Part shown: positions 1,334 through 38,896 of the stretch, in pieces
Layout: every line of letters starts with the position of its first letter
Position numbering within the stretch: the stretch's first letter is position 1
Virus record (IMG/VR): IMGVR_UViG_3300049215_000529
Coordinates: 1 to 64,000 of that record
Reading direction: 5' to 3' (one strand)
DNA: 64,000 nt
Notes under the pieces: generated by a model
Database searches by the model: none
What the model saw: only the letters and a program-made list of their open reading frames with translations
What the model was told of the DNA's origin: nothing
Program-made: the position numbers and the translations under genes

Positions 1334-2569
1334 ATGTTAAATTCTAAACTTTTTCAAAATCTGATTCATCCTCAGGCTATTGAAGTATGTCGCATACTTA
1401 ACGAGGCGGGGCATCAAGCCTACCTAGTAGGTGGTTGTGTGCGCGATTTGTTCTTAGGTGTTCAACCAAAAGACTGGGATATTACAACAGATGCAAGCCC
1501 TCAAAAAGTACTGAGCCTATTTCCTAAAACATATCCTACTGGATTACAGCATGGTACTATCACAGTTGCCATGGGTGAAGGTGTTCAAAATCATTTCGAA
1601 GTGACCACATTTCGAATTGAAGGAGAATACAAAGACGGAAGACGTCCAGAAGAAGTGTTTTTCGTGATGAATGTCGAGCAAGATTTAGCAAGACGAGACT
1701 TAACCATCAATGCCATTGCTTATGATCCATTGTCACATGAAATTGTTGATCCTTATCAAGGCGTTGAAGATTTAAAACGAAAAATAATCAAAGCTGTTGG
1801 TAATCCTAAATCCAGATTTCAAGAAGATGGACTTAGAATCATGCGTGTAGCTAGATTTGCTGCACGTTTTGGTTACAGCGTAGATGGAGAAACGTTTAAA
1901 GGTATGGAAGAGAGCTTAGAAACTCTCGAAAAGGTCTCTAAAGAGAGAATTAGCGATGAATTGTGTAAGACTTTGATGACAGCTCAACCATCTTATGGTT
2001 TACAACTGCTTTTGAAGTCGGGTGCTTTAGATATTGCTTGTCCTTTGCTGGCAGGACGACAATTACCTCTGTTAGCTCATCAGGATCGTGTTAAAGGTGA
2101 GCTAGAAACTCGCCTTGCCTTCCTGTACAACAAGATTCCGGCACATGAAGTCAATGCAGAGCTGTTTAATCTAAAACTTTCTAATAAGGAAATCAAAAAG
2201 GTGGTCTTTTTATTGGAAATTTTGGAGCGGTTTGCTACTTTTCAAGCTAAAGACACGCCGTTAGCCTATAAGAGCTTTATGGCAGTCATCAAAAATCATG
2301 CTCCTGAGCCCTGGCAACAGGTACTAGAGCAATTTATAGAGTTGTCTGAAGTCCTTGGCACCCCATCTAGGGCGCTCCTCGCCAAGTACAAGACAGAAAT
2401 CGTGTATTCAAAGAAGGAAATGCAGATAAATGGAAATGATTTGATGGAAGCGGGTATTCCTGCCGGTCCTAAGTTGAAAATAGCTTTAGATGAATGCTAC
2501 AATGAAATTTTGCGTCATCCCGAACACAATACCAAGTCTTATTTGCTAGAAGTGACTAAGAAGCTTTAA
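1334..2569 (+). CDS. cca: CCA tRNA nucleotidyltransferase (class II)
   Basis: GGCVRD, DWD catalytic carboxylates, EVTTFR plus flexible loop EGEYKDGRRP, RRDLTINA, EDGLR templating motif, C-terminal INGNDLM..GIPAGP tail. Confidence 0.9.
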   Translation: MLNSKLFQNLIHPQAIEVCRILNEAGHQAYLVGGCVRDLFLGVQPKDWDITTDASPQKVLSLFPKTYPTGLQHGTITVAMGEGVQNHFEVTTFRIEGEYKDGRRPEEVFFVMNVEQDLARRDLTINAIAYDPLSHEIVDPYQGVEDLKRKIIKAVGNPKSRFQEDGLRIMRVARFAARFGYSVDGETFKGMEESLETLEKVSKERISDELCKTLMTAQPSYGLQLLLKSGALDIACPLLAGRQLPLLAHQDRVKGELETRLAFLYNKIPAHEVNAELFNLKLSNKEIKKVVFLLEILERFATFQAKDTPLAYKSFMAVIKNHAPEPWQQVLEQFIELSEVLGTPSRALLAKYKTEIVYSKKEMQINGNDLMEAGIPAGPKLKIALDECYNEILRHPEHNTKSYLLEVTKKL

Positions 2570-4031: not shown

Positions 4032-4075
4032 AATTATAGTCCAGATTATGCATATACACCTGCTATATAACAACG

Positions 4076-13073: not shown

Positions 13074-13116
13074 ACTTGACTCCAAAACACTACATATCAG
13101 CTCGTTTCCTTTTGAC

Positions 13117-13174
13117 CAACCAGAGCACTTCAATCATCGGGTTCAGAACCACAAAACTTCCAACATTGGGTTCA
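13117..13174 (-). repeat. Imperfect 29-bp tandem duplication of the 3' end of gene 13143-13832
   Basis: TGAACCCAATGTTGGAAGTTTTGTGGTTC then TGAACCCGATGATTGAAGTGCTCTGGTTG (22/29 identical). Confidence 0.8.
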
Positions 13175-15619: not shown

Positions 15620-18600
15620 TTAGAACAGTCTCTTAGAGGTCTTAGCAAATGCTGCGGACAATTGATTCCAATCATCAGACTCAGTTGGAGCAGCGCCATT
15701 AACTTCACCAGAACCTAGCATACCAACTAGTGGTAGGCGACCAGCTTCCTTGCGTAGCACTGGAGCATGCTTTGCAACTACTCTCTTCAAGGACTCGAAG
15801 CTATCATCATTAAACTTCATGATTTCATCGACCTGAGAAGAGACTGCGGCTCTATCACTGTGGCACAAACCACGTTCAACCATGTCATATGCTAGCTCGT
15901 AAGAACGTGCCAACTTGACTCTGTACTTGCCAAGCTCTGCTTCCAATTGAGCCTTGACGTGTTCCTTGACCAATTCGGTTGCGAATTCGCCACCACCATC
16001 AACTTCACCGAAGTACTTCTTGTAGTAAGCAACTGCATCCTTATCCAAACCTTCTGCTACTAGAGCATCTAGGTCCTTAGGATCTAGCTTGCCTTCAGAG
16101 ACAAGCTTGTAAATGGCTTCTGCTTCCTTACGTACCTTAGGTGGAGCTTTAGCGACGTCCATCATTTGCTTGTTGATTTCTGGAAGAGTTTCAACTTTTC
16201 CTAGGCTGTCAGATGGCTTGGTGTCAAGCTGGGTCTGACCATCAGCAAGGCGATCTGCTTCTTGCAACATATCGCTGAACTTAGCCTTGGACATATCTTG
16301 AATTTCGCCATCGTCTTCTTTGCCAAGAGCATCAGCTGCTAGCTTAGCACGAAGAGCGGCACGACCTTCTTTGCTATCGTAGGAGGCAGTAACAACTGCA
16401 GTTCCCTTTGGTAGCATGTCTAGAGCCTTTGGATCCTTAATGTCAACGTTTACTTCGTTAGCATCGTCGGTTGGCAATGCAGCATCCAAATCAAGAGCAG
16501 GGTCTGCATCAACAGAGTGCTCGTCGCTCATCAAATCCTTAACTGCATCCAAGTCAGCATTGGTCTCTTGGACTAGATTCATCAAGTCATCATCCGAATG
16601 ACTATCGTGTTCGGTTGTCATAGTTTCTCCCTCAGCTAGTGCTTCAAGTTCTGCTTCCATTTCGGCGCGCTTGACGATAGCCTGGGTACCACGAGCATAC
16701 TTGACGAAAGCAGTCATAAGCTGGAATCCGTCAGCAACAGCGGTCTTGGCTTCGTTCATTGCATCTTGTACGAGGGTGCCAACTAATTCCGTATTGGACG
16801 GGCTGACAGCGCCTTTATCGTAAAGACCTGCGATCATTTCAAGTTCAGATTGATGATCGTTAAGCTCTGCAACGGCTTCCTTCATAGCGTCTGTAAGGGC
16901 TCCGTTCAATTGCTTTCTTAGAGTGTTTAGAGTGGCAGTGCTAAAGCTATCAGAAGCTGTGGTTGCGCCCATTTCTGGAATTTCTCCACCTTCCATTGCG
17001 CCCATTTCTGCTTGCTCACCAGTCAAGGCTCTAACGCCTTCAACTAGGTCAGAAGATAGGTCTCTAACTTTTTCAGCTAGACTTAGTACGTTTTCCTTTG
17101 GATCACCAGACTTGCCAGTGTCTTCTGCTTGGGGCATAGGCTCACCAGATGGACCAGCCTCTGGTGCTGGAGCAGCAGGCTCAGCTTGTGCGGTCTTGTA
17201 TAGTTTGGCAACTTTCTCAGCGCCTTCCTTCTTGACCTTAGCAATCAAAGTGCTACCAAATTCCTTGGTTGCAATGTGGTCGTACATTAGTTCAGTACGT
17301 CCACCAGAAAGCTCGTCAACAGATGCGGTAAGAAGAAGCTTGTCGCCTAGGAATACTTCCCATGCGCTCTTAGCTAGGTTCTGAGTTCCGTCTTCGTTTG
17401 CTGCCTTGACGAATCTTGCTCTCAAGGATGCTCTTTGTAGCATTTCCTTACGCTTCTTTTCGTCAGGAGTTTCTGCGGAAGCTGGAGATGGATGCATTCC
17501 ATCAACTGGTCCGACGCCTGGGAATGGCTTTTGTCCGACCATTTGCTTGTCTTCGTAATCACGAAGTTGTTCGTTAAGCTTGTCTTTTGGATACTTAACT
17601 TGACCAGGAGTTGGGGTGTTAACATTACCCTTTTCCAAACCATTCTGGAAATAAGCTTGCTTGTTTTCTAAAGCACCCTTAGCTAAGTTAACAATTGCTT
17701 GACGGCGAATTGCTCTCTCTTCTGCTTCTGCGCGAGCAAGCATCTTTTTACGCTCTAACTCGTTTGCAGGGTCAGCAGACTCTGGGCTTGGATGCATTCC
17801 ATCAACAGGACCTACGCCTGGGAACGGAGATTGACCAACCATTTGCTTGTCTTCTTTTTCGCGAAGCTCTTCATTTAGTGGGTCCTTAGTATATTTTGGT
17901 TGACCTGGAGTAGGCTCGTTAACGCCGCCAGCACCCTGGTAGTAACCCTTTTTATTTAGATCTTGTGTTCCAGACATAGTTTCCTCTTGTGTTTGTTTTG
18001 TAGAAGTGTTTGCTAACTTATCCAAGGTTTGTTTCATTTGGCTCAATTTAGCTTCAATGGTCTTGGTGACCTCGCGAAGCTCGGCGATAGTATCTGCTCC
18101 AACATTGGCAGAGGCATATCTTGCAGTTGGAGGAGCCAATCCTGAATCGGCTGCAGGTCCAGTTAAACCAGGACCGGTCATTTGATCAGATGCCAGTTGA
18201 TTACCAGGTTCTTCCATATTTTCTTCATTTGAAATAGAAGATTGAAGTTTTTGGAAGTCCTCGATTGCCTTATCAACATCCTTTTTAAAGCTTTCAAGAT
18301 CTTTAGCAGTAACGCTTACATTGGTTACTTTTCCTGGATCTTTAGAAAACCCGTCGCCACCCTTATTTTCAAAAGAGAGATTGGCTACATAAGTATCTTC
18401 AGCCAATTTTTCTAGCTCTTTTTGCTTTGTTTCAACATAGCTATTAAGAGTGTTAGCGGCTGCAATGATGTGTTTGATGCTAGCTTTTGGATCGGCACCA
18501 TTAACAACAATGGATAGTTCAATTGGATTTAAGTCTACGTTAATTTCGCCGTAGCAGCTCTTGGTCTTCATATGGGTGCAGAAGTCTTGTTCGGCACGGG

Positions 18601-19198
18601 CAACACGTCCACAATCAGAGCAAATAGCGCGTCCGACAGCAGTACCCATAGAAACACAGTTAGAATATCCAGTGGCAACCTTACGAGCCAAATCTGGGTA
18701 ATTATGTTTATCTAATGCACATAGCGCGATAACCCTCTTGAGCCCGCGATCGTAGTAGGTATCAACAATAAAGCCTCTTACATGATCTACCGAGCTGGAT
18801 TTATGATCGATGCAAAGAGGCTTGCCTACCCACTTCTTATATGCTTTTACGAGTTCTTCCTCGGGGAATATGTCGCCATTAGAATTCTTATAAGGCTTAA
18901 TGCTTGGATCATTACTCATCCAGCGCCATGAGCCATCCTGCTTATTCCAGCCCACTTCAACGTGTTCGCCCTTGGCGTTTAGCTTAGGAGTGCCATCGTC
19001 ATTAAGCGCGGCAGCTTCAGCAGCATGCATCATAACAGCAGAAAAATAAAGGAAATCTTCAGCTTTAGGGGCAATCTTTTTTAGATTCGCAGCTACTTTT
19101 CTAAAGTTCTCTAGAATTTCTGGATTAACGGCAGGAATACAGGATGCTGTATTTTCAATCCTGTTAATCTCTATGAGTTCACCTTGTTTGATAAACAT
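15620..19198 (-). CDS. Prohead protease fused to a long scaffold-like polyprotein
   Basis: N-terminal NGDIF, CIDH (His), VSMGT (Ser), CSDC..FCTH, ELSIV..GADPKA as in HK97-type maturation proteases; ~900 aa acidic helical C-terminus; between portal and MCP. Confidence 0.8.
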   Translation of the reverse strand: MFIKQGELIEINRIENTASCIPAVNPEILENFRKVAANLKKIAPKAEDFLYFSAVMMHAAEAAALNDDGTPKLNAKGEHVEVGWNKQDGSWRWMSNDPSIKPYKNSNGDIFPEEELVKAYKKWVGKPLCIDHKSSSVDHVRGFIVDTYYDRGLKRVIALCALDKHNYPDLARKVATGYSNCVSMGTAVGRAICSDCGRVARAEQDFCTHMKTKSCYGEINVDLNPIELSIVVNGADPKASIKHIIAAANTLNSYVETKQKELEKLAEDTYVANLSFENKGGDGFSKDPGKVTNVSVTAKDLESFKKDVDKAIEDFQKLQSSISNEENMEEPGNQLASDQMTGPGLTGPAADSGLAPPTARYASANVGADTIAELREVTKTIEAKLSQMKQTLDKLANTSTKQTQEETMSGTQDLNKKGYYQGAGGVNEPTPGQPKYTKDPLNEELREKEDKQMVGQSPFPGVGPVDGMHPSPESADPANELERKKMLARAEAEERAIRRQAIVNLAKGALENKQAYFQNGLEKGNVNTPTPGQVKYPKDKLNEQLRDYEDKQMVGQKPFPGVGPVDGMHPSPASAETPDEKKRKEMLQRASLRARFVKAANEDGTQNLAKSAWEVFLGDKLLLTASVDELSGGRTELMYDHIATKEFGSTLIAKVKKEGAEKVAKLYKTAQAEPAAPAPEAGPSGEPMPQAEDTGKSGDPKENVLSLAEKVRDLSSDLVEGVRALTGEQAEMGAMEGGEIPEMGATTASDSFSTATLNTLRKQLNGALTDAMKEAVAELNDHQSELEMIAGLYDKGAVSPSNTELVGTLVQDAMNEAKTAVADGFQLMTAFVKYARGTQAIVKRAEMEAELEALAEGETMTTEHDSHSDDDLMNLVQETNADLDAVKDLMSDEHSVDADPALDLDAALPTDDANEVNVDIKDPKALDMLPKGTAVVTASYDSKEGRAALRAKLAADALGKEDDGEIQDMSKAKFSDMLQEADRLADGQTQLDTKPSDSLGKVETLPEINKQMMDVAKAPPKVRKEAEAIYKLVSEGKLDPKDLDALVAEGLDKDAVAYYKKYFGEVDGGGEFATELVKEHVKAQLEAELGKYRVKLARSYELAYDMVERGLCHSDRAAVSSQVDEIMKFNDDSFESLKRVVAKHAPVLRKEAGRLPLVGMLGSGEVNGAAPTESDDWNQLSAAFAKTSKRLF
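17429..17953 (-). repeat. Internal ~75-aa duplication in the protease/scaffold
   Basis: EDKQMVGQxPFPGVGPVDGMHPSP occurs twice (about 17729-17953 and 17429-17663). Confidence 0.85.
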
Positions 19199-24515: not shown

Positions 24516-26375
24516 TTAGGCTGGAGGTGGGACTGCTGGTGGAGGTCCGCCTGGAGGAGGTGCTGCCTCTCCGCCGCCTGGAGGAGGTGCTGGGGGAGGA
24601 GGTGCTCCGCCACCACCGCCTGGAGGTCCGCCTAAATCTAATCCTGGTAAGCCTGTTGGAGGAGGTGGTGGGGCTCCGCCGCCACCTGGAACTTCTCCTG
24701 GTACGCCACCTTCACCTGGTGGAGCTTGTCCTGGAATGCCGCCTTCTGGTTCTGGAATTTCATCTTCCTCATCCAAAGCTCTTAGAGAGGTCAAATCCAT
24801 AGCATCCAAAGCCACTTTTTCCTTGTTAGTGATAGCTTGTTGAATAGCTTCCTTGCGCATCTTCCTTACTTCATCTTCGAATTCTAGACCCATAGAGCGA
24901 TACAAGGTATGCAAAGATGCTCTCTTGGACTTTTCATCTCCTTGAGTTAGAGTAACCAAAGTGTTGATGTAGTCTCCTGCATCGAACAAGGACATATGAT
25001 TCCAGTCAATATCTGGAACGATTAATTGCTTTTCGCCACCAGAGTAGTCGTAGAATCCTTGAATCTTAGAGATTGGCGCAAAGACTTTTCTCTTTAGCCA
25101 TTGAGACATCATGTTACGGAATTGCATGTAACGTTGTCTCAAAACGTCTAGAGCAACACCGCCGTTTGCATAGGTAGTATCAGCTCCACCATCCATCAAT
25201 ACTGGTGGAACTTGTAAACCAACATAGATTTCCTTGATGATTTGAGTGATATCACCAGAAATATCGTAAATACCTTGACCGTAACCAACTCTTTCTACAG
25301 CTACACCCTCATGGGTGAAAATTTTGAAGTCCTTGTCATATTGAGCTTCTTCGAAAACATTTCTCCAAGCTTCAATGTCAGCAAAGGTTGGCTTATAGTT
25401 TTCTGATCCAATCTTAACCAAAGTCAATGGATTAATCATGTTGTCAGCTTGAGCATACTTGGATTCTCTAAGCTTGTCGAATAACATCAATTGGCGGAAA
25501 ATACAGACTGGAAGACCAGTTCCTCTGATTTCATATGGGCTAATTCTACGTGCCAAATGACTGACATGGAAATTATCTAGTGGAATGTTTTCGCCACGCT
25601 TAACCGAATCAATGATATGATTGTTAAGTTGTTTGCGTTGTTCAATATCAGTTGTGCGATTGGAGAAAATGATCTTCTTCAAATTTTCGTCGGGACGCAA
25701 CATGATGATTGGCTCATTGGCTACCACTGTGCGTTTTACAATCATATAGTCTGGGTTTTGAATAAGAACACGGCTCCACTTGCCACGGCTTTCATCTAGC
25801 TCAGCATAAACAAATGCTTCACCTAACAACCAATATTCCTGCGCAATTTGAACGCAAATGTTCATCAAGTCAATCTCTTCAATCATGTCATTGAAGAATT
25901 TCTCAATTTCTTTGTTAGGGCACTTTATGTTAAGCTTGCTGATTGGGTATGTGCTGTGAAGATTGATAGCGTTATGAACGAATGGATTCAAAGCATAAAA
26001 GCTACGGCACCAGGCGTTGATAGTAGCTCTATCACGAGGAAGATTGAGGTTGCTGTTAAGCCATAGTGGAGAATATACTTCTGGTGTTTGTTTGATAGAA
26101 TCGCCATGAATGCCACGGAACATGCCGCCGACACTGCTGACAGCTTGACCGTACTTTTTCATACCAACAGAAGCAGCAACTACTGAATTAGCAGTCTGAC
26201 CAAATTCTTTAACATTAGGTCCAGAACCATCTCTAAATAGACCTTGCTCTACTTCTTCAGATAATCCGTCTCTTCTAAATTGTGATACGCCTTGAGCCAT
26301 AAGGGCACTTACTTGCGGAACAGTCGATCTGTTTTCTAAATACTGTTCTGACTTGGACTTTTTTAAACCAGACAT
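24516..26375 (-). CDS. Portal protein with poly-Pro/Gly C-terminal tail
   Basis: Follows terminase; NPFVHNAINLH, YWLLGEAFVY, HLARRISPYEIRGT, GLQVPPVLM portal-like motifs. Confidence 0.8.
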   Translation of the reverse strand: MSGLKKSKSEQYLENRSTVPQVSALMAQGVSQFRRDGLSEEVEQGLFRDGSGPNVKEFGQTANSVVAASVGMKKYGQAVSSVGGMFRGIHGDSIKQTPEVYSPLWLNSNLNLPRDRATINAWCRSFYALNPFVHNAINLHSTYPISKLNIKCPNKEIEKFFNDMIEEIDLMNICVQIAQEYWLLGEAFVYAELDESRGKWSRVLIQNPDYMIVKRTVVANEPIIMLRPDENLKKIIFSNRTTDIEQRKQLNNHIIDSVKRGENIPLDNFHVSHLARRISPYEIRGTGLPVCIFRQLMLFDKLRESKYAQADNMINPLTLVKIGSENYKPTFADIEAWRNVFEEAQYDKDFKIFTHEGVAVERVGYGQGIYDISGDITQIIKEIYVGLQVPPVLMDGGADTTYANGGVALDVLRQRYMQFRNMMSQWLKRKVFAPISKIQGFYDYSGGEKQLIVPDIDWNHMSLFDAGDYINTLVTLTQGDEKSKRASLHTLYRSMGLEFEDEVRKMRKEAIQQAITNKEKVALDAMDLTSLRALDEEDEIPEPEGGIPGQAPPGEGGVPGEVPGGGGAPPPPPTGLPGLDLGGPPGGGGGAPPPPAPPPGGGEAAPPPGGPPPAVPPPA

Positions 26376-26433: not shown

Positions 26434-28296
26434 TTAAAACTTACGAGGCATATACCCGCTAGCTACAAGTGGTTTTTTGATTTGTTGATAGTTTTGTTGC
26501 TGAAGAATTGGATTATTATTGCTAAATCCGTTTGTTATTAGGAATTTATAAGCAATGTATGCATTCAATAATGCCATAAAACCATCGTTTGGAGTACTTC
26601 CTTTAACATAATGAACACTTGGATCTCCGCCCCTTGAAATTGCTGGTTTAATCTCCATACTAGTACAATGCTCAATTAACCAAGCTACTTTTTCATAATC
26701 TCCAAATGGAAATCTAATCATTCCCTTTTTCATTTGTTCATATAATTCACCAATATAATAATCTCTTTCAAAAACTATTTCTTTTGGAAATGCCTCTTCA
26801 GTATACTTAACGTGACCATTAACTCTATTATGAGCGCGAGAAACTAGATAGCGGTCGCCATAGGTATTATGTAAAATTGCAGAAAAGTCATTAGAGTAAC
26901 CAATATCTCCTACTGCCAACTGAATGCTGTACTGCCTCATAATCTGATCGATGATTCCCTTTTTACTTTCCAAATCATTACGCCTAAACTTAGTTGCAAA
27001 CTCAATAGATAGTAGTCCAGGACCAGATACCTGCAAAACTACGGCAGTACTGTAAGATTGTCCTACAGCTTTAACTTTATCTGGATTAGCTAGTTGTTCC
27101 AAGTCGGAACGTGCGCCATAGTCTATTCCAACGACGATGATATTATCTTGAGACTTCTCAATGCGGGCGGAAAATTTTCTACCAACATCAGCACATTTAT
27201 CTCTAATTTCTTCTGGAGTAATAGGGCTAGAATCTCCCTGAAAGAACTCACCCAACACTTCGTTTTGAAATACGCGTTCAGTATTGATTGGATGAACGCC
27301 AGGCATTTCATTCAAGATATCTTCTTTACTGAACATAGGCATGTAAAGCTGGTTTATATGAAACCCAATCATTAAACAATCTTCATCGTCAGAATTCTTA
27401 AGAGCAACCCACTTACCGCGCTCGGCAGCTTCGCGCTTATCTTGTTCATGTCCACAGTGAGTGCATTTGACGACGAAGCCATGCAACCAAATTTTCTGCC
27501 AATCATCAGAGCCAGGAGTATAAAGTGGGAAATGCTCTTTACATTGCTCACAGCCTAAGTAATAATACTGTTGGGAAGATGTTTGCCACATCTTGTAGAA
27601 ATCGGAACCCTTACGACGTGGCGTTCCAAAATACACCTGCACACCCTTAGATGGCTTACCATACTTAGCAGTGGTAAGAACTTTGAGGGAGTTACCGATT
27701 GCCATTCCAGTAGTCTTCTGAACTTCGTCAAAGAAAATAACGTCAGCAGTACGACCCATGATGCGGTCGCCGTCAAGTCCAACCGATTCTACCCACAAAT
27801 GGTTGCCGCCAACAAATTGCTTGAAGTGCAAAGAGTCGCTAGTAGCCGTAGATTGATCTAGTAGAACCTGCATACAAGACTTGGCTTTACCAGTCTTCTT
27901 CTCTTGACCAACAGCAGGAACAGCAGTAACGATGATTTGATTAAGTTTAGTTTTAGAGTAAGCGGCAGCCAATTCTAATTGAGGAAAGGCATGGATAACT
28001 CTAATTGGAGGTTTCTCGCCAATACCAAAAATTCCTGAGCCCATGAAATACATTTCAAGGGCGCTTGCCATAGTAGTAGCTCCGACCTGACGACCTTTAA
28101 CCATGATAACTGGCTTGGCGTTAGGCTCTAAAGCTTTAATTCCAATGTAACGATAAATGTCGGCAAAAGGTCGATAGCCATTGCCCTCTAATCTAAATGG
28201 TTTACCATCTAATGTTAAATTGAGCTGGCAAAATGTTACTGGGTCAAGACTGAGAAGTTGTTTCTTAAGTTTTTCAAAAAGCTCTTTATCGTCCAT
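26434..28296 (-). CDS. Terminase large subunit (lambda GpA-like)
   Basis: KGRQVGATT Walker A, IFFDEVQ Walker B, GTP coupling motif, CxxC Zn ribbon, VGIDYG nuclease. Confidence 0.9.
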   Translation of the reverse strand: MDDKELFEKLKKQLLSLDPVTFCQLNLTLDGKPFRLEGNGYRPFADIYRYIGIKALEPNAKPVIMVKGRQVGATTMASALEMYFMGSGIFGIGEKPPIRVIHAFPQLELAAAYSKTKLNQIIVTAVPAVGQEKKTGKAKSCMQVLLDQSTATSDSLHFKQFVGGNHLWVESVGLDGDRIMGRTADVIFFDEVQKTTGMAIGNSLKVLTTAKYGKPSKGVQVYFGTPRRKGSDFYKMWQTSSQQYYYLGCEQCKEHFPLYTPGSDDWQKIWLHGFVVKCTHCGHEQDKREAAERGKWVALKNSDDEDCLMIGFHINQLYMPMFSKEDILNEMPGVHPINTERVFQNEVLGEFFQGDSSPITPEEIRDKCADVGRKFSARIEKSQDNIIVVGIDYGARSDLEQLANPDKVKAVGQSYSTAVVLQVSGPGLLSIEFATKFRRNDLESKKGIIDQIMRQYSIQLAVGDIGYSNDFSAILHNTYGDRYLVSRAHNRVNGHVKYTEEAFPKEIVFERDYYIGELYEQMKKGMIRFPFGDYEKVAWLIEHCTSMEIKPAISRGGDPSVHYVKGSTPNDGFMALLNAYIAYKFLITNGFSNNNPILQQQNYQQIKKPLVASGYMPRKF

Positions 28297-28324: not shown

Positions 28325-28852
28325 AAGAAAAAACGTGGACCTTACACCTATGAAGGAAAAGACTGTATACATTGTCTTAGACCTTTAACAAAAGATAACA
28401 CCAGACCAAGTGATATACAACAGGCTAATTATTTATGTATTAGCTGCACTAAAGCTAAAGGTAAACGCAGATATTTTGAAAGAAAAGAGTTAATTAGAGA
28501 GCAGCAAAGAGAATACGATCTTGAAAATAAAAGAAAGGTCATAGAAGCTTATGGTAGCATGTGCACTTGTTGTGGCGAAACTATTTTAGAATTTTTAACA
28601 ATTGATCACACTCATAATGATGGGGCGGAAGATAGAAAAAAGAATGGAAAGAAAACGGGCGGCAAACTTTATCGTTGGCTAATTCAAAATAATTTTCCTA
28701 AAGATAAATACCAATTGCTTTGTTTTAATTGCAATTGTGCAAAAGGTTTCTTTGGATATTGTCCACATAAGAAGCCAGAAGTTATTATTAGAGTAACTAG
28801 GAAGAAGATTAATCCTTCACTGGGGTCAGAGCGTGAAACGCATCAGTATTAG
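28319..28852 (+). CDS. HNH-family endonuclease inserted on the opposite strand
   Basis: CTCCGE, LTIDHTHNDG, LLCFNCN; N-terminal CxxC pairs; likely start ATG 28319 (track 28181). Confidence 0.8.
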   Translation: MDKKKRGPYTYEGKDCIHCLRPLTKDNTRPSDIQQANYLCISCTKAKGKRRYFERKELIREQQREYDLENKRKVIEAYGSMCTCCGETILEFLTIDHTHNDGAEDRKKNGKKTGGKLYRWLIQNNFPKDKYQLLCFNCNCAKGFFGYCPHKKPEVIIRVTRKKINPSLGSERETHQY

Positions 28853-29462
28853 ATGGGTCAATCTCTGTATCAGATCCAGTATCACGAGAGCCTAAGTTAC
28901 TGTAGCTTTCATAACTTGCTGGGTTGTTCTTCTTAGCCTCTAAATTCATCTTACTAACCAATCTAATTAAATTATCGTCGTCCCAATCCTTGGCATCAGA
29001 GACGTCAGATTTGTGAATGGATCTGATTTTCTCAATGATTGCTGGAACTGGTAAATTGCCCTTGCTGTCTCTAATATAGTTCTCTAAAGTTTTGTGAATC
29101 TGTGGCATCTTCTTGAGAACGATTGGAATCATGTCAACTTTCTTTTCCATAGCATCATTTTGATCCGATGCTACTTTAGTTTTGACAGATACATTCTCAT
29201 CAGCAGATTGCTTGATTTTGTCTAGATAAGCAGACAATCCACTTCTTTCCTTCATATCTTCTACTGCTGCCTCTACAGAAGGATACTTTGATTTTCCATT
29301 CATGATGGAATTAATTTGATCAAACAAAGAGTTCTCAATAGTGCGAGGTTGTACAGCACCCTTCTCCAACTTTCTTTGAAATTGGCGAAGCCAGTGATCC
29401 TCATCAATGCTGGAATCAGCCTCTCTCGAAACTACTGGTTGGTGTCTGGTATACTTGGACAT
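28809..29462 (-). CDS. Hypothetical head-module protein
   Basis: Likely start 29462 coupled to the upstream stop (track 29480); TKVASD motif. Confidence 0.55.
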   Translation of the reverse strand: MSKYTRHQPVVSREADSSIDEDHWLRQFQRKLEKGAVQPRTIENSLFDQINSIMNGKSKYPSVEAAVEDMKERSGLSAYLDKIKQSADENVSVKTKVASDQNDAMEKKVDMIPIVLKKMPQIHKTLENYIRDSKGNLPVPAIIEKIRSIHKSDVSDAKDWDDDNLIRLVSKMNLEAKKNNPASYESYSNLGSRDTGSDTEIDPSNTDAFHALTPVKD

Positions 29463-30406
29463 TATTTCTTCTCGCCCCAAATGTTTGCGCCGTTGTTGTA
29501 ATTAGCTGCCCAATCCATATTGTCGCTATCCTCAACATGCAAATCTTGATCTGGCATGAAGCCTCTGTCTTGACGAACGGCATAACCCATGTCCATCAAA
29601 AGTTGCATTACTTCAGCTTGTTCGCGCTTGTTTAGATTATAGTACTTGACTTGTCTGTCAAACAAATCCTCAATGTCATGACCTGCAGAAACCATTCCGT
29701 TAATACAGACTCGGGCAATTCTTGAAGTCAATAGTGGTGCCACGATGTAGATGCCCTGAACTCCGGTTACCTTTTGTGCTTCTTTAACAATGCCATCAGG
29801 CTCGAACTCGGACTTCTTCTTGCGGCTGGTCTTCTTGTGTTTCTTTACTTTGTCAAGACGATCGTGTAGTCTCTCAATACCATTATCAATGGTGGCTCTG
29901 ACTTTTTCAATTTGGTCTGCATCTAATTCGCCATCCAAATCCAATCTCATTGCCTTGGAAATTTCGTTATCTAGTCTGTCTAGATAAGCGACTGCTCTCT
30001 CAAGTCCTGCGGTATCATAACCGGAATGCTTTGGAACATCATCACAACGTTCTTTAACCCAAGCAATAAAACCTTTGGCGCCTCTAGATTCCCAATCCCA
30101 CTTAGGATCCTTTTTGGATTTCTTAGCATCATTGTCATCGATATTGTCTTTATCGTCTTCGTGAACTTCAATGTGTGGCTCTGGCTCAGGGTCATGGGTG
30201 CCTGGAGGAGCGCCGGGAAGATCTTCAATTACAATAGAAATTTCGCCCGGTTCGCCTACTTCAAGTGGAGACATGGTAGCCTCAGCTGGATGATCTGGAT
30301 GTACCTCGGAAACTTCCAATGGTACCAGTTCCATAGGACTTCCGCCCATTGGCATTCCACCTGATGGGTCAACAACTAGTAATTGTGCTTCTGACTGTAG
30401 TGACAT
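29462..30406 (-). CDS. Hypothetical head-module protein
   Basis: 314 aa, GAGG SD, acidic N-terminus, VKEAQ motif. Confidence 0.55.
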   Translation of the reverse strand: MSLQSEAQLLVVDPSGGMPMGGSPMELVPLEVSEVHPDHPAEATMSPLEVGEPGEISIVIEDLPGAPPGTHDPEPEPHIEVHEDDKDNIDDNDAKKSKKDPKWDWESRGAKGFIAWVKERCDDVPKHSGYDTAGLERAVAYLDRLDNEISKAMRLDLDGELDADQIEKVRATIDNGIERLHDRLDKVKKHKKTSRKKKSEFEPDGIVKEAQKVTGVQGIYIVAPLLTSRIARVCINGMVSAGHDIEDLFDRQVKYYNLNKREQAEVMQLLMDMGYAVRQDRGFMPDQDLHVEDSDNMDWAANYNNGANIWGEKK

Positions 30407-30470: not shown

Positions 30471-31577
30471 TTAAATATTCCATTTATCTTCATACATAGT
30501 GATTCCGACATCTGTTGTGCCGTAATCTGGGTTAATATTCGTTGGATTTCCTAAATCTTCATCTGGCAAGTCTACTCCATCTGGCAATCCAAACAAGCCA
30601 GAGGTAGGGGCTGGATTCAAATACTTATCTATTAAATTCTTAACTTTTTCAGAATCCATCTTAGGCTCATCGCCAGTATAATCGCGCCCGAAATCTAGCT
30701 CAGCCGGGGTTTTATCCTCGGAGTCATTTTGAGGCAGGTACTTGTCTAGCAAGCCGCCTATCTGGGCAGAGTAAGGATAGCTCTCGGAATCTCCTAAATT
30801 AACTGATTCAGGAGAAATTGAGGTATCTGGTTCGCCAGTAGGACCTAACTGAATAGGGCTGTTGTAGGACTCGGAATCTCCCAAGATAGGACCTGACCCA
30901 ATATTTTCATCAATTGGATAATCTATAGAATGCACATCATGTTTCTTCTTAGGAGCCTTAGGCACTCCTTGATATGGGCTATTCTTCCAGTCATAGATTG
31001 AAGTTCCATGCTCTTTGGGAGGCAGCATATGATCTTCATTATCGTCAGCAAAGAAAGCGCCTGGGCTCTTATGTGGAGCATCTGTAATAGTCTTTATCTT
31101 CTTACCTTCACTCATCGCAGTATAGGCACCATCACCATAATCAAAGTTTGGACCATCATTGTCATCGCCCTTAAACTTGTCATTTAACTTATGAACCAGA
31201 CTCATGCCTGGCATACGGGCTTGTTTAATAATTTTTTCAAAAATGGAAGCCCTAGCTTGACGTTCAGGATTTTTCTTTACACGATTACCATTATCCATTT
31301 GCCAAGAATCATCGGCAACATAACGTGGTTTTAGACGTTCACGACGGGCATCCAAAAACTCTTTAACACTTTTGTAATTTTGCAGACCATGCCAGCCAGT
31401 TCCTGGACCGACGTGCTCCATTCCCGGAATTGTATACAAATCGTAGTTGCGATAAAATGGTTCCTCGAAACGAGGTTGCACCACGATTGCAGGATCTGAT
31501 TTGTATTTCTTTTTTCCAGGTGTTGGTTCATTAGGTCCGCCGTCGCCTTGAAAATATGCTTTTTTATTTGGGCACAT
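30471..31577 (-). CDS. Acidic, largely disordered head-module protein
   Basis: N-terminal KKAYFQGDGGPNEPTPG matches the protease repeat. Confidence 0.55.
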   Translation of the reverse strand: MCPNKKAYFQGDGGPNEPTPGKKKYKSDPAIVVQPRFEEPFYRNYDLYTIPGMEHVGPGTGWHGLQNYKSVKEFLDARRERLKPRYVADDSWQMDNGNRVKKNPERQARASIFEKIIKQARMPGMSLVHKLNDKFKGDDNDGPNFDYGDGAYTAMSEGKKIKTITDAPHKSPGAFFADDNEDHMLPPKEHGTSIYDWKNSPYQGVPKAPKKKHDVHSIDYPIDENIGSGPILGDSESYNSPIQLGPTGEPDTSISPESVNLGDSESYPYSAQIGGLLDKYLPQNDSEDKTPAELDFGRDYTGDEPKMDSEKVKNLIDKYLNPAPTSGLFGLPDGVDLPDEDLGNPTNINPDYGTTDVGITMYEDKWNI

Positions 31578-32337
31578 TGGTTTTCCCTTTAACTGCTTTC
31601 ATATAGTAAGGATATACGGCTTCGGTAATAGGAATATGATTCCATAGACCTAATTTAGTAATTAAATAGCTAGATTTATCGGCATCACGCTTGAAGGCTT
31701 CATTTAGCTTTTCTACCATGGACTTCTCAGTGGAAATTTTAACCGATTCTGGATTCTTTTGTACAAATTCAACAATAGCATCATCTAAATCAAAATCCAA
31801 CTTAGCAGCTAAATAAATGGCTCGAATCACTCTATTTCTATTGGAAGTGAGTGTGGTTTTTGGATCTAAACAAGTTCTGATTTTTCTTTCTTTGATGTCT
31901 TTAAACCCTCTATTGGTTGGATCTACAATATTTTTTAGGTCCATTGATAGTAGTAAAGCGTTACATGTGAAGTCACGACTAAACATCTCTTTTTGCATAT
32001 CGGTAGCATTGGGAATGCCACGAGCAGCTAAAATTTGTTCGATGCCTGGGACATTAAAATTAGATGAGAAGTCCATTTTCAGAGTACCCACAAAGATAGT
32101 GCTATGACCATCTTCCATAGTTTTTCTGGTGATGTTGTACTTCTTTTTTAGTTCAATAGCAAATTCTTGAGACAAATAGTCTACAGTCTTATCGCCTGTA
32201 GTAATATCCAAATCTGAAATATTCTCTAAGTGCCCCATATACTTATCGCGGGGCGTACCACCACAAATATAGGGTTTAGCTGACCCTATTTTCTTTTGTA
32301 CTTCCTGCATCGTGTGGAGTAGTTCTCGGAGTTTCAT
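31564..32337 (-). CDS. Short class II nucleotidyltransferase (CCA/poly(A) polymerase head domain) with altered templating motif
   Basis: CGGTPRD, DLD, SRDFTCNA, IVDPT..GFKDI, SNRNRVIRA in place of EDxxRxxRA. Confidence 0.8.
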   Translation of the reverse strand: MKLRELLHTMQEVQKKIGSAKPYICGGTPRDKYMGHLENISDLDITTGDKTVDYLSQEFAIELKKKYNITRKTMEDGHSTIFVGTLKMDFSSNFNVPGIEQILAARGIPNATDMQKEMFSRDFTCNALLLSMDLKNIVDPTNRGFKDIKERKIRTCLDPKTTLTSNRNRVIRAIYLAAKLDFDLDDAIVEFVQKNPESVKISTEKSMVEKLNEAFKRDADKSSYLITKLGLWNHIPITEAVYPYYMKAVKGKTNVPK

Positions 32338-32350
32338 TCATTTGTTTCAA

Positions 32351-34300
32351 TTATACGGTTGGGGCGACAGGCGGACGAGGTGCAGCTGCTGGAGGGGCGC
32401 CTAAATCTTCTGCGATTTCTACTTCTGGAGTTTCCTTGGCAGGACCAGCTAATTCGGCGGCTTCTTGTTCTTTTCTCATCTTCTTACGAGCCTTTTCTTT
32501 ATCTTCATCTTGTTGCAATTTTCCCTTAAGTGCAGCCACCTCTGGTTTTTCAGTAGTCTCTCCGCCCTTCAAATCAATTTCATTACCAGCCATACCACCA
32601 CGTAGCTTGGATAAAATGTCTTCCAAACGAGTAGAGATATAGTTATTTGATTCAAGAGCTTTGTTGGTTGCTTCGGATAGAGAAGGGAAATAGGAGGCAA
32701 GTCCAAGACTGCCTAACATCATATCTACAATTCCAAGTTGTCTTGGAACTTCTCTGGTCTTGTAAATTTTGGCTAAGTCTTCTAGTTTGGCAACTACGTC
32801 AGCAACAGTGATGTTTGCAAATACTGCATCAACTTTGTTATCAAAGTCGCTAGCAGCGGGCACTGCAGCTTCTCCTGGTGGAGCAGCAATATCATCTTCA
32901 GTTACTTCCAAGGGCTCTTCGGTTGCGGGAGCATCTGGTGCAACAGGTGCTTTTGGAGTTGGGATCGGAGCGGGATCCAATGGTGCTGGTGCTGGAGCTG
33001 TAGTCATTGGCTCATCAATTGGTCCTGGTGGAGCTGCTTGTGCCTCTGTAACCAATAGCATATCATCGTCAGCTACATTGATGTTGTCGTCAACTTCTAA
33101 TCCATCATCTTCTGCTACACCCTCATCAGTAGTGAACTTGGATGTTTCCATGCCTTCCAAAAACTCACTAATGCCTTTCGATTTTTGTGGCTCTACTGGC
33201 AAAGAGTTTGGGGCTTGAGTTGTGGTTGCAGCTTGTCCTCCGCCACCTTGTGGATTGCCTGGAAAATTTTCGTTAGGACCAGTTTCTGGAACGCTATCAG
33301 AAGGCGCGTTTTGAGGCATACCTGGACCCATAGATGGCAATCCTCCTGGAGCGCCTGGATGACCAGCACCTGTTGGATCGTCTGGTGGCGTAGCTGGAGG
33401 AATTACATTTCCAGCGCCTGCTTCACCTTGCTCTTTTACCTCTTCTCCAGATTGTGCTGGGCTTTGAGCCAAAGAATGTAGTACAGATGCTGCCTTAGTA
33501 AAACCTTGCCTTTGAAGTACGTTAGCTTGACGCACAATCATATCTTCATACAATCTAGTTGAAGAGCTAATCTTGTTAACCATCTGAATCCTCTTCTTTA
33601 ATTCGTAGATGGATTCCAGTAGTGATTCGAATTCTTTTCCAGAGAAGATTTGACCATCAGGCGATCTTAGCAATTTTTCTGCTGAGTCCAAGCGTCCAAT
33701 GATTTTATTTCTTTGCTTCTCGATAATTTGTTTACGCTCAGTCTTTTCGGTAACAGAGTCTCTGGCGAAATCAATGTCACGTCCAGTAACTTGTGGTTCT
33801 GGCTCTTTGACTGGATCTGGTTTCACATGTAAAAAATAACCGGGAGCACCGTTTTCATACCATAGTTGTGCAAATTTGTATTTCAAGTGATCTCCTGATT
33901 CATGATATTTTAGCCAGTTCAAGAAGTCATAAGTCTCCATGATATTCCAACCTGAAGTAGCTTTACGAATAGCATCTACACGACCACTGCCACTTTTCTC
34001 CGTTTGATAAATAGAACGAACTGCTGCCAACCACTTTTGGGTATTGTGCTGCCCAGGGATGTGCATGTATTGGTCGAAATTTGGATATGCGTCCTTTTTG
34101 CTAAAATCTAGGTGAGGTATGGACTCTGGATCAAATTTAGAGTAGTCGATGCCCACCTCATCAAAATACTTCATCAACTTTTCAAGCTTAGTCTTCATTT
34201 CTGGATTCAACACCAATTCTTCATCAGATGGACGAGTAGCCATTTCCAATTGTTCCTTGGATGGCATATCGATAATTGGTGAGTGGTGTTTGTTGGTCAT
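32351..34300 (-). CDS. Large head-module protein with Pro/acidic linkers
   Basis: 649 aa; KDAY, KFAQ motifs; helical module. Confidence 0.55.
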   Translation of the reverse strand: MTNKHHSPIIDMPSKEQLEMATRPSDEELVLNPEMKTKLEKLMKYFDEVGIDYSKFDPESIPHLDFSKKDAYPNFDQYMHIPGQHNTQKWLAAVRSIYQTEKSGSGRVDAIRKATSGWNIMETYDFLNWLKYHESGDHLKYKFAQLWYENGAPGYFLHVKPDPVKEPEPQVTGRDIDFARDSVTEKTERKQIIEKQRNKIIGRLDSAEKLLRSPDGQIFSGKEFESLLESIYELKKRIQMVNKISSSTRLYEDMIVRQANVLQRQGFTKAASVLHSLAQSPAQSGEEVKEQGEAGAGNVIPPATPPDDPTGAGHPGAPGGLPSMGPGMPQNAPSDSVPETGPNENFPGNPQGGGGQAATTTQAPNSLPVEPQKSKGISEFLEGMETSKFTTDEGVAEDDGLEVDDNINVADDDMLLVTEAQAAPPGPIDEPMTTAPAPAPLDPAPIPTPKAPVAPDAPATEEPLEVTEDDIAAPPGEAAVPAASDFDNKVDAVFANITVADVVAKLEDLAKIYKTREVPRQLGIVDMMLGSLGLASYFPSLSEATNKALESNNYISTRLEDILSKLRGGMAGNEIDLKGGETTEKPEVAALKGKLQQDEDKEKARKKMRKEQEAAELAGPAKETPEVEIAEDLGAPPAAAPRPPVAPTV

Positions 34301-38836: not shown

Positions 38837-38872
38837 AAAAGAAAATGCCCAGCTTACGAATAAACTGGGCAC
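38837..38872 (-). terminator. Intrinsic terminator separating replication and head modules
   Basis: Minus strand TGCCCAGTTTA-TTCG-TAAGCTGGGCA then TTTTCTTTT. Confidence 0.85.
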
Positions 38873-38896
38873 TTTACACATTCTATGCTGGTAATT

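What the first reader, a model, noticed from the sequence alone, without database searches (positions are those of the whole stretch)
31564..32337. Second class II nucleotidyltransferase with rewired templating motif (EDxxR to SNRNR), inside the head module
Seen: GGxxRD, catalytic DLD and SRDFTCNA are intact. Motif D reads SNRNR (31831-31845) versus EDGLR in the canonical enzyme (1823-1837). The EVTTFR/flexible-loop region is diverged and the protein is only 257 aa with no tail domain. Known: in class II CCA enzymes EDxxR reads the Watson-Crick edge of CTP/ATP, and substitutions there change nucleotide selection. Inference: this is not a redundant CCA enzyme; it may add other nucleotides or tail non-tRNA substrates, and its location suggests late expression or packaging.
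Basis: partly seen in the sequence, partly recalled or inferred. Interest (0 to 1): 0.78.

Follow-up and report, generated by a model that had tools for sequence, protein, structure and literature searches.

The report
Minimal huge-phage nucleotidyltransferase, altered motif D
This gene encodes a stripped-down relative of the enzyme that repairs tRNA ends; it is a strongly conserved core gene of a group of ~450-kb phages, has lost the parts needed to recognise tRNA and to choose C then A, and therefore probably tags some other RNA end, which makes it a good candidate for a new enzyme activity, not yet a demonstrated one.

Summary
ORF 31564-32337 (-) encodes a 257-aa class II nucleotidyltransferase (PF01743) with an intact catalytic set (GGTPRD, DLD, D89, SRDFTCNA) and SNRNR where the canonical enzyme at 1334-2569 has EDGLR.

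It is not a redundant copy. It belongs to a large phage-only family of head+neck-only enzymes.
- Five complete 433-481 kb relatives all carry it, but only two carry a canonical CCA enzyme.
- dN/dS is about 0.06.
- N166 is kept in 77 of 81 and N168 and R169 in 81 of 81 sequences (80 relatives plus the window).

"Rewired template" is only partly supported.
- Deeper family branches keep a canonical-like xDPxR.
- The derived clade is mostly xNxNR, but 10 of 39 representatives have other residues at the Asp position.
- Published mutagenesis shows Arg, not Asp, sets specificity in poly(A) polymerase.

The gene sits in a conserved block three genes upstream of TerL and portal. It overlaps a disordered 368-aa protein by 14 nt, and 22 of 80 relatives have the two fused. 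Distant relatives fuse the enzyme to peptidoglycan hydrolases, a HAD RNA-repair phosphatase or a PcfJ-like domain.

Best reading: a late-expressed, non-CCA RNA 3'-end tailing enzyme, possibly carried in the virion. Substrate and nucleotide are untested.

The parts
31564..32337 (-). 257-aa minimal class II nucleotidyltransferase (head + neck only)
   Evidence: ORF. PF01743 at E 1e-13. AF2 pLDDT 95.5. Foldseek matches CCA- and A-adding enzymes at E about 1e-11.
32245..32262 (-). Motif A part 1, GGTPRD (residues 26-31)
   Evidence: G26, G27, R30 and D31 are invariant in all 81 sequences although several synonymous codons are used.
32206..32214 (-). Motif A part 2, catalytic DLD (residues 42-44)
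   Evidence: D42 and D44 are invariant across the whole family.
32056..32073 (-). DFSSNF (residues 89-94), with the third catalytic carboxylate D89. It replaces EVTTFR of canonical enzymes and is a family signature.
   Evidence: Alignment to the canonical enzyme. D89 and S91 are invariant and F90 nearly so across 81 diverse members.
31957..31980 (-). Motif B variant SRDFTCNA (residues 120-127). SRD replaces RRD.
   Evidence: S120, R121 and D122 are invariant in all 81 sequences. S120 is nearly invariant across the family.
31897..31923 (-). Motif C, DPTNRGFKD (residues 139-147)
   Evidence: D139 and D147 are invariant among relatives.
31831..31845 (-). Motif D variant SNRNR (residues 165-169), at the position of EDxxR
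   Evidence: Translation. N166 in 77/81, N168 in 81/81 and R169 in 81/81, with both Asn codons in use. Variable in more distant members.
31798..31824 (-). Motif E equivalent, RAIYLAAKL (residues 172-180)
   Evidence: R172 is invariant family-wide.
30471..31577 (-). gp368, the disordered partner protein. Its N-terminal motif (AYFQG...) and C-terminal motif (...YEDKWNI) are conserved. It is fused in frame to the enzyme in 22 of 80 relatives.
   Evidence: Fusions. Alignment A3. Low-confidence predictions: pLDDT 0.38 in the Atlas and pLDDT 30-65 in the AF2 model of a natural fusion.
31564..31577 (-). 14-nt overlap between the enzyme's stop and the gp368 start (translational-coupling geometry)
   Evidence: Sequence. 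An overlap of 14, 11 or 8 nt in the +1 frame occurs in 31 of the 47 unfused relatives where the junction could be placed; the +1 frame holds in 43 of those 47.
32351..34300 (-). gp649, the upstream low-complexity protein. It is always the upstream neighbour.
   Evidence: Present upstream in 71 of 71 loci with room. Also upstream in the distant locus L006. Atlas pLDDT 0.44.
28809..30406 (-). gp314 and gp223, conserved unknown proteins between gp368 and TerL
   Evidence: Found in 77 of 80 loci. No family hits.
26434..28296 (-). Terminase large subunit
   Evidence: phrog_675 at E 7e-55.
24516..26375 (-). Portal protein
   Evidence: phrog_16240 at E 2e-51.
15620..19198 (-). 1192-aa protein with an N-terminal head-maturation protease domain
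   Evidence: phrog_18299 at E 1e-15, residues 105-213.
38842..38875 (-). Strong terminator-like hairpin upstream of gp151. It probably marks the start of the transcription unit that contains the enzyme and the packaging genes.
   Evidence: 15-pair stem followed by a T run. It is the longest stem among the terminator-like sites found between 24000 and 41000; the other minus-strand sites have 5-7 pairs.
1334..2569 (+). Canonical 411-aa CCA-adding enzyme (comparator, EDGLR)
   Evidence: PF01743 + PF12627 + PF13735. NCBIfam NF009814 at 317 bits, above the 290-bit cut-off.

Best explanation
The ORF encodes a catalytically competent, minimal (head + neck only) class II template-independent nucleotidyltransferase. 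It defines a large family found here almost only in phage sequences and is a core gene of a clade of ~430-480 kb phages. It is not a CCA-adding enzyme.

Shown here:
- The metal-binding and triphosphate-binding residues are intact.
- The tRNA-binding body and tail, the flexible loop that switches C to A, and the Glu and Asp of EDxxR are absent.
- The templating Arg (R169) is retained.
- The gene is under strong purifying selection.
- It has a fixed position upstream of TerL.
- It is translationally coupled to, or fused with, a disordered partner (gp368).

Inferred:
- It adds one or a few nucleotides to the 3'-OH of an RNA other than a standard tRNA acceptor end. A is the most likely nucleotide because the Arg is kept.
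- There is no C-to-A switching.
- gp368 acts as a docking or targeting tail.
- The protein is made late with the packaging genes and may be loaded into the capsid and delivered with the DNA.
For: Fold and motifs:
- PF01743 only.
- AF2 pLDDT 95.5, with a helix at 99-105 where canonical enzymes have the flexible loop.
- Foldseek matches CCA- and A-adding enzymes over head + neck only.
- The catalytic residues are invariant despite saturated synonymous change.
- Median dN/dS is 0.06.

Not a CCA enzyme:
- NCBIfam scores are 63 against a cut-off of 290 and 43.5 against 305.65.
- When EDxxR was randomised in the human enzyme, with Asn included in the library, only D165 and R168 were recovered under A-repair or CCA-repair selection (PMC11784652).
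- 31 of 32 phage tRNA genes already encode CCA.

Arg as the determinant:
- E. coli PAP D212A still adds A, while R215A becomes unspecific (PMC2532741).

Core status:
- 5 of 5 complete relatives have it and 2 of 5 have a canonical enzyme.
- Median identity is 69%, against 75% for TerL and 51-58% for gp649, gp368, gp314 and gp223.

Partner:
- 22 of 80 relatives carry in-frame fusions to gp368.
- A further fusion architecture (enzyme + PcfJ-like domain + gp368-like part) was seen on 3 contigs, from more than one assembly.
- The overlap geometry is conserved.

Late or virion context:
- Same-strand block with TerL, portal and a head protease, downstream of a strong terminator-like hairpin.
- Distant members at the same syntenic position are fused to Peptidase_M15 + phage tail lysozyme.

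RNA-end theme:
- One lineage is fused to a HAD_SAK_1 RNA-repair phosphatase domain.
- The clade carries 3-4 RNA ligase genes per genome.
Against: - There is no biochemical or expression evidence. No RNA sequencing run holding the gene was listed.
- The nucleotide and the acceptor are inferred only by analogy.
- The SRD variant of motif B has unknown consequences for ribose discrimination, so a dNTP or DNA activity is not excluded.
- In 3 of 5 complete relatives this is the only PolyA_pol-family gene, which leaves room for a tRNA role.
- Virion association rests only on gene position and on fusions in distant relatives.
- The predicted enzyme-gp368 complex gave no answer.
- The partner is predicted to be disordered, so it explains nothing mechanistically.
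Confidence: 0.5

Rival explanations
1. It is still a tRNA 3'-end repair enzyme (A-adding or CC/CCA-adding). tRNA recognition would be supplied by gp368 or not needed at all. It would be the clade's own tRNA repair activity.
For: It has the class II CCA-type fold and catalytic core. It is the only PolyA_pol-family gene in 3 of 5 complete relatives, which carry many tRNAs. Deep family members have DDxxR. That variant supported A repair, but not CCA repair, in the human enzyme selection (PMC11784652). One lineage is fused to an RNA-repair HAD domain.
Against: There is no body or tail and no flexible loop. Asp was indispensable in the in vivo selections even though Asn was in the library. The partner is predicted to be disordered and not body- or tail-like. 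The gene lies apart from the tRNA arrays, which start beyond 88 kb, and apart from the RNA ligase genes at 112-118 kb. NCBIfam scores are far below the cut-offs.
Confidence: 0.15
2. One reading: SNRNR is a re-specified protein template, so the enzyme selects a different nucleotide (for example U or G, or a modified NTP).
For: N166, N168 and R169 are almost invariant in 80 relatives under strong purifying selection. xNxNR is the majority state of a derived clade, in 29 of 39 members. Active-site motif positions change together with it: C25, C125, K/R167, N168 and L180. Rational mutation of the Asp and Arg is reported to change the nucleotide added (PMC3925840, citing Cho et al. 2007).
Against: Within the same clade, 10 of 39 representatives have Q, S, M, Y, E or D at the Asp position. 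That is not what a strict template residue would show. PAP D212A keeps A specificity. The co-variation may simply reflect shared ancestry. Nothing was measured.
Confidence: 0.17
3. It acts on a non-RNA acceptor. It could add nucleotides to the 3' ends of the phage genome at packaging (terminal-transferase-like end protection), or it could nucleotidylylate a protein such as gp368.
For: Its position next to the terminase is fixed. Motif B is SRD instead of RRD, and motif B is the ribose-discriminating motif according to general knowledge of the family. It is obligatorily coupled or fused to gp368. Pol-beta NTase domains in polyvalent phage proteins have been predicted to modify proteins (PMC5512222).
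Against: All characterised PF01743 enzymes extend RNA 3' ends. The second Arg and the Asp of motif B are invariant. No evidence points to a DNA-binding element.
Confidence: 0.1
4. It is a decaying or non-catalytic paralogue kept for a structural role.
For: It has lost several canonical motifs (E and D of motif D, the first R of motif B, the flexible loop).
Against: All metal- and triphosphate-binding residues are invariant. dN/dS is about 0.06. It is a core gene in complete genomes.
Confidence: 0.03

Closest known systems
Class II CCA-adding enzymes (e.g. Geobacillus stearothermophilus 1MIV, Planococcus halocryophilus 6QY6, Thermotoga maritima 3H39)
   Same: Same head + neck fold: Foldseek E about 1e-11, TM 0.66-0.71 by query. 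Motif A, the third carboxylate, the R-D of motif B, motif C, and the Arg of motif D and of motif E are shared.
   Different: No body or tail domains, no flexible loop, SRD instead of RRD, DFSSNF instead of EVTTFR, and S-N instead of E-D in motif D. It scores 63 bits against a 290-bit equivalog cut-off. It has a disordered partner in place of tRNA-binding domains.
Class II A-adding enzyme (Aquifex aeolicus, 4WBY/1VFG) and CC-adding enzymes
   Same: Among the best structural hits. Deep members of this family carry DDxxR, a variant compatible with A addition only in the human enzyme selection.
   Different: Those enzymes keep EDxxR and the full body and tail that measure the tRNA. This protein has neither.
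Bacterial poly(A) polymerase I (PcnB, 3AQK-3AQN)
   Same: Same catalytic fold. Untemplated tailing with specificity set mainly by the motif D Arg is the best functional analogy.
   Different: PAP keeps EDxxR and a C-terminal RNA-binding region. This protein scores 43.5 bits against the 305.65-bit TIGR01942 cut-off.
Polyvalent / injected multidomain phage proteins (Iyer et al. 2017, PMC5512222)
   Same: Relatives carry the enzyme as the N-terminal domain of proteins that also contain Peptidase_M15, phage tail lysozyme, HAD or PcfJ-like domains.
   Different: The window's protein is a single domain with a separate, overlapping partner gene. Injection has not been shown for any member.
Pandoravirus class II NTase-like domain lacking EDxxR (bioRxiv 10.1101/2023.12.02.569716)
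   Same: A viral class II NTase fold without a recognisable EDxxR motif. The authors speculate that base specificity has been lost.
   Different: It is an unrelated lineage in a giant eukaryotic virus, fused to a BTB domain. Here the Arg is kept and the replacement motif is itself conserved.

Membership tests
Class II nucleotidyltransferase superfamily (PolyA_pol head, PF01743) | Pfam PF01743 above the gathering score | tested here: met
   52.1 bits against a cut-off of 23, E 1e-13.
Class II nucleotidyltransferase superfamily (PolyA_pol head, PF01743) | Motif A (GGxxRD ... DxD) plus a third carboxylate | tested here: met
   GGTPRD, DLD and D89 are invariant in all 81 sequences and across the family.
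Class II nucleotidyltransferase superfamily (PolyA_pol head, PF01743) | Motif B RRD | tested here: not met
   It reads SRD. The Ser is invariant, and the second Arg and the Asp are kept.
Class II nucleotidyltransferase superfamily (PolyA_pol head, PF01743) | Head + neck fold | tested here: met
   AF2 pLDDT 95.5. Foldseek PDB hits at E about 1e-11, TM 0.66-0.71.
CCA-adding enzyme (class II, EC 2.7.7.72) | Motif D EDxxR amino-acid template | tested here: not met
   It reads SNRNR. Only the Arg is retained.
CCA-adding enzyme (class II, EC 2.7.7.72) | Flexible loop between motifs A and B, needed for the C-to-A switch | tested here: not met
   The region differs in sequence from the canonical copy and is modelled as a confident helix at 99-105. 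This rests on a prediction.
CCA-adding enzyme (class II, EC 2.7.7.72) | Body and tail tRNA-binding domains (PF12627, PF13735) | tested here: not met
   The protein has 257 aa and neither Pfam family, while the canonical copy has both.
CCA-adding enzyme (class II, EC 2.7.7.72) | NCBIfam equivalog score (NF009814) | tested here: not met
   63.4 bits against a cut-off of 290. The canonical copy scores 316.9.
CCA-adding enzyme (class II, EC 2.7.7.72) | CCA addition to tRNA | not testable with these tools
   Needs an enzyme assay or complementation.
Bacterial poly(A) polymerase I (PcnB) | TIGR01942 / NF008634 score | tested here: not met
   43.5 bits against 305.65, and 27.3 against 702.
Bacterial poly(A) polymerase I (PcnB) | Processive A tailing of RNA | not testable with these tools
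   Needs an enzyme assay.
Polyvalent / injected phage proteins | Several unrelated catalytic domains in one polypeptide | tested here: inconclusive
   Met in relatives: P0200 and P0231 (Peptidase_M15, and lysozyme in P0200), P0239 (HAD_SAK_1) and P0123 (PcfJ-like). Not met in the window's own single-domain protein.
Polyvalent / injected phage proteins | Presence in the virion and delivery into the host | not testable with these tools
   No cultured relative was found. The phage collection holds only 4 weak hits.
RlaP RNA-ligase-associated NTase (PF10127) | Pfam PF10127 match and adjacency to an RNA ligase gene | tested here: not met
   Only PF01743 matches. The RNA ligase genes lie at 112-118 kb, far from the gene.

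The most novel reading that the evidence does not exclude
The enzyme with its disordered gp368 tail is a capsid-loaded effector of huge phages. It would be injected with the DNA and would tag host or phage RNA 3' ends with a nucleotide choice not seen in known class II enzymes, set by an Asn/Arg template. That would be a new, naturally evolved specificity class and a new kind of early counter-defence or host-takeover enzyme.
Probability: 0.12. Interest if true: 0.85.

Novelty: new variant of a known kind. Interest (0 to 1): 0.55.

Why it matters
[quoted passage not shown] Laboratory selection could not replace its Asp. This protein is a natural, abundant family that breaks that rule:
- The representative search returned 211 protein clusters (50% identity) at E ≤ 1e-10.
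- 318 IMG/VR loci encode a relative.
- It is a core gene of ~450-kb phages.
- It runs the same catalytic core without the Asp, without the flexible loop and without any tRNA-measuring domain, under strong purifying selection.

Characterising it would show what the minimal head + neck module can do alone and how nucleotide choice works with an Asn/Arg pocket. It would also show why huge phages keep such an enzyme welded to a disordered tail next to their packaging genes. If it proves to be virion-delivered, it would add an RNA-tailing activity to the known repertoire of injected phage effectors.

Tried and rejected
- **Complex prediction.** The enzyme with gp368 scored 0.00, and the tool's verdict was 'no answer'. 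It is not used as evidence either way.
- **AF2 model of a natural fusion (P0121, 561 aa).** This tested whether the gp368 part packs onto the neck as a replacement for the body domain. The enzyme part is confident. The gp368 part has pLDDT 30-65 with only a few helices, so there is no support for a folded body or tail substitute.
- **Annotating the flanking genes.** Pfam, PHROGs, PDB sequence searches and the ESM Atlas gave nothing for gp649, gp535, gp368, gp314, gp252, gp239 or gp223.
- **Defence-system and plasmid searches.** PADLOC gave only a chance-level hit, and plasmids gave only two weak canonical-type hits.
- **Expression evidence.** No RNA run holding the gene was listed. The DNA holders are moss metagenomes.
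- **The 7704-aa representative P0251.** It has several PolyA_pol domains and looked like a possible polyvalent protein. It carries Cpn10 and repeated canonical-type domains and was set aside as uninformative.
- **Cho et al. 2007 (engineered U/G- and dNTP-adding variants).** The paper is not held. Which motif B Arg contacts the 2'-OH could not be checked, so no claim is built on SRD.
- **Programmed +1 frameshifting at the enzyme/gp368 overlap.** This was considered. The overlap frame is conserved, but there is no conserved slippery site, so ordinary translational coupling is the simpler reading.
Full report
**1. The observation**

The ORF at 31564-32337 on the minus strand encodes 257 aa. Coordinates 31831-31845 (-) translate to SNRNR. 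Coordinates 1823-1837 (+) in the 411-aa enzyme at 1334-2569 translate to EDGLR.

The short protein carries these motifs:
- GGTPRD (residues 26-31)
- DLD (42-44)
- D89 within DFSSNF, at the place of EVTTFR
- SRDFTCNA (120-127)
- DPTNRGFKD (139-147)
- RAIYLAAKL (172-180)

Pfam finds only the PolyA_pol head domain (E 1e-13). The long protein has the head, the RNA-binding neck and the tRNA_NucTran2_2 domain. The long protein also passes the NCBIfam CCA equivalog (317 bits against a cut-off of 290). The short one scores 63 bits. The two are 24% identical.

An AF2 model built on 81 family members has pLDDT 95.5. It matches class II CCA- and A-adding enzymes and PAP over head + neck only (Foldseek E about 1e-11, TM 0.63-0.71). 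One refinement: motif B reads SRD, not RRD.

**2. The genome**

The window is the first 64 kb of a 204-kb IMG/VR virus record estimated to be 47% complete. It comes from moss metagenomes. Complete relatives are 433-481 kb.

The record carries 32 tRNA genes, all beyond 88 kb, and 31 of them encode their own CCA. CCA synthesis is therefore not needed for tRNA maturation in this phage. A CCA enzyme here would serve repair only.

**3. The family**

- A word-indexed search found 776 relatives. The best 120 are 68-96% identical and about 257 aa long, on contigs of up to 479 kb.
- An exhaustive search of 50%-identity representatives found 211 clusters at E ≤ 1e-10.
- IMG/VR holds 318 loci that encode a relative.
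- Collections of cultured phages contain no close member.
- Family-wide invariant residues are G26, G27, R30, D42, D44, D89, S91, E117, R121, D122 and R172. This is the full catalytic set plus the family signatures SRDF and DFSSNF.
- Pairwise dN/dS among relatives has a median of 0.06. Both Asn codons and up to six Arg codons are used at the invariant positions. The conservation therefore reflects selection, not recent ancestry.

**4. Motif D**

Among the window protein and 80 IMG/VR relatives (58-100% identity; 81 sequences):
- position 165 is S, T, A, N or V
- N166 is kept in 77 of 81 (S three times, Y once)
- position 167 is R or K
- N168 and R169 are kept in 81 of 81

The picture is looser across 108 representatives at 25-65% identity. 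The Asp position is D in 58, N in 26 and something else in 24.

I built a tree and rooted it on the window's canonical enzyme. That root is a long branch, so its placement is uncertain. On this tree the deep lineages read xDPxR (DDPRR, DDPKR). A nested clade with SH-aLRT support of 88-91 reads mostly xNxNR, in 29 of 39 members. The other ten have Q, S, M, Y, E or D.

The Asp-to-Asn change is therefore a derived, largely maintained state of the window's clade. It is not a strictly held template residue. The Arg is nearly universal.

Three published results help to interpret this:
- When all three EDxxR positions of the human enzyme were randomised, with Asn in the library, only D and R were recovered at their positions under selection for A or CCA repair. 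DDxxR was recovered under A repair only (PMC11784652).
- In E. coli PAP, D212A keeps A specificity, while R215A adds A, C and U at random (PMC2532741).
- Rational changes to the Asp and Arg can change the nucleotide added (PMC3925840, citing Cho et al. 2007).

Together these argue that SNRNR is incompatible with ordinary CCA addition. They do not argue that SNRNR imposes a new base. A PAP-like, Arg-driven preference is at least as likely.

**5. Not a redundant second copy**

All five complete relatives carry the short enzyme. Only two carry a 419-425 aa canonical enzyme.

Within the conserved block, the short enzyme's median identity to relatives is 69%. The comparison values are TerL 75%, gp239 71%, gp252 65%, gp314 58%, gp223 56.5%, gp649 53% and gp368 51%. 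The short enzyme is the core gene, and the canonical CCA enzyme is the accessory one.

**6. Context**

All genes from about 4 kb to 63 kb run on the minus strand. In transcription order the region reads:
- UvsX-like recombinase, then three ORFs without annotation
- primase
- a sigma-like protein
- a strong terminator-like hairpin at 38875-38842
- gp151, gp535, gp296, gp239, gp252, gp649
- the enzyme
- gp368, gp314, gp223
- TerL, then portal
- further downstream, a 1192-aa protein with a head-maturation protease domain

Among the 80 relatives with enough flank, gp649 lies upstream in 71 of 71. gp368 lies downstream in 76 of 78, and TerL lies downstream in 73 of 74.

Part of this order survives even in a distant phage whose enzyme is 33% identical. 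There, gp151-like, gp239-like, gp252-like and gp649-like genes precede the enzyme.

The gene is therefore at the leading edge of the packaging and head operon. Late co-expression is the natural inference, but it has not been measured.

**7. The partner**

The enzyme's stop codon overlaps the gp368 start by 14 nt. In the 47 unfused relatives where the junction could be located, the overlap is 14, 11 or 8 nt in 31. It is in the +1 frame in 43 of the 47.

In 22 of 80 relatives the two genes form one reading frame of 447-783 aa. Further fusions appear among the representatives: P0121, P0122 and P0123 are confirmed by direct match to gp368, and about 11 more are linked to them by similarity. P0123, which also has a PcfJ-like domain, was found on three contigs from more than one assembly.

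gp368 has a conserved N-terminal stretch that begins with AYFQG followed by a Gly run. It also has a variable middle and a conserved C-terminal end. It is predicted to be disordered both alone (Atlas pLDDT 0.38) and within a natural fusion (pLDDT 30-65).

It therefore looks like a flexible tail with short docking motifs, not a substitute for the tRNA-binding domains. A complex prediction gave no answer.

**8. Other architectures**

In the deeper, Asp-keeping lineages the enzyme is the N-terminal domain of longer proteins:
- Peptidase_M15 plus phage tail lysozyme in P0200, and Peptidase_M15/VanY in P0231
- a HAD_SAK_1 RNA-repair phosphatase domain in P0239

Combinations of unrelated activities like these are the hallmark of the polyvalent proteins proposed to be injected with phage DNA (PMC5512222). 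Peptidoglycan hydrolase domains in a late-operon protein suggest a virion-associated, cell-wall-crossing polypeptide. The HAD fusion, and the 3-4 RNA ligase genes per genome in this clade, keep RNA ends as the most plausible substrate.

**9. Conclusion**

Best explanation (confidence about 0.5): a minimal, active class II RNA 3'-nucleotidyltransferase that does not make CCA. It works as the enzymatic head of a two-part, sometimes fused, protein with a disordered tail. It is made with the packaging genes and may be carried in the capsid.

Rivals:
- tRNA A or CCA repair (0.15)
- a truly re-specified nucleotide template (0.17)
- a DNA-end or protein acceptor (0.10)
- a non-catalytic remnant (0.03)

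The finding is real and more than a curiosity. Its most exciting element, altered nucleotide choice, remains untested and is weakened by variability within the family.

Noticed in passing
L003:1111-1764 (-) = genome record 151571-152224, outside the window: A third, very divergent PolyA_pol-like ORF of 217 aa (FGGAVRD ... DIDVV) just passes the Pfam cut-off (23.8 bits against 23) over the first half of the head domain only. It has no NCBIfam, PADLOC or clear PDB match.
   Followed up: partly
genome record 88304-201645 (outside the window); tRNA(CUA) at 199329-199420: There are 32 tRNA genes, and 31 encode their own CCA. One is a suppressor-type tRNA with anticodon CUA, which ARAGORN calls Pyl. 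Only 7 of the 195 six-frame ORFs of at least 150 codons in the record end in TAG. This could mean TAG avoidance or partial recoding.
   Followed up: partly
window 31540-31577 (-) and alignment A3: gp368 and all fused relatives have an almost invariant AYFQG motif followed by a Gly run, exactly at the enzyme/partner boundary. It looks like a processing or docking site. A head-maturation protease domain is encoded at 15620-19198.
   Followed up: no
window 32263-32265, 31963-31965, 31870-31872 (-): residues C25, C125, C156: Three cysteines sit next to motifs A, B and C. They are characteristic of the Asn-type clade (C in 62-88% of Asn-type representatives but 16-28% of Asp-type ones). C125 and C156 are invariant in all 81 sequences. 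They could form a metal or redox site. Their spatial proximity was not checked.
   Followed up: no
window 1334-2569 (+): The canonical CCA-adding enzyme is accessory in this clade. It is present in 2 of 5 complete relatives. It lies on the opposite strand from nearly every other gene in the window.
   Followed up: yes
window 38897-39337 (-): The 146-aa sigma-70 region 4-like protein is the most conserved gene of the block. It is 90% and 82% identical to two relatives in which TerL is 83% and 75% identical.
   Followed up: no
window 12300-13133 (-) and 3150-4073 (-): A GIY-YIG / SegE-like homing endonuclease gene lies within the structural region. The 307-aa ORF next to the canonical CCA gene looks like another mobile endonuclease but was not tested. 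Relatives carry GIY-YIG and DUF723 insertions at other points of the same block.
   Followed up: partly
genome record 112248-118202 and 156552-156761 (outside the window): There are three RNA ligase (PF09414) matches in this half-genome and 3-4 in each complete relative. RtcB is present in one of five. RNA repair capacity is unusually heavy in this clade.
   Followed up: partly
window 32338-32350 (-): There is no recognisable Shine-Dalgarno sequence upstream of the enzyme's start codon in the 13-nt gap after gp649.
   Followed up: no
window 2566-3132 (-): A 188-aa ORF converges on the canonical CCA gene and overlaps its 3' end by 4 nt. It has no match in Pfam, PADLOC or PDB.
   Followed up: partly
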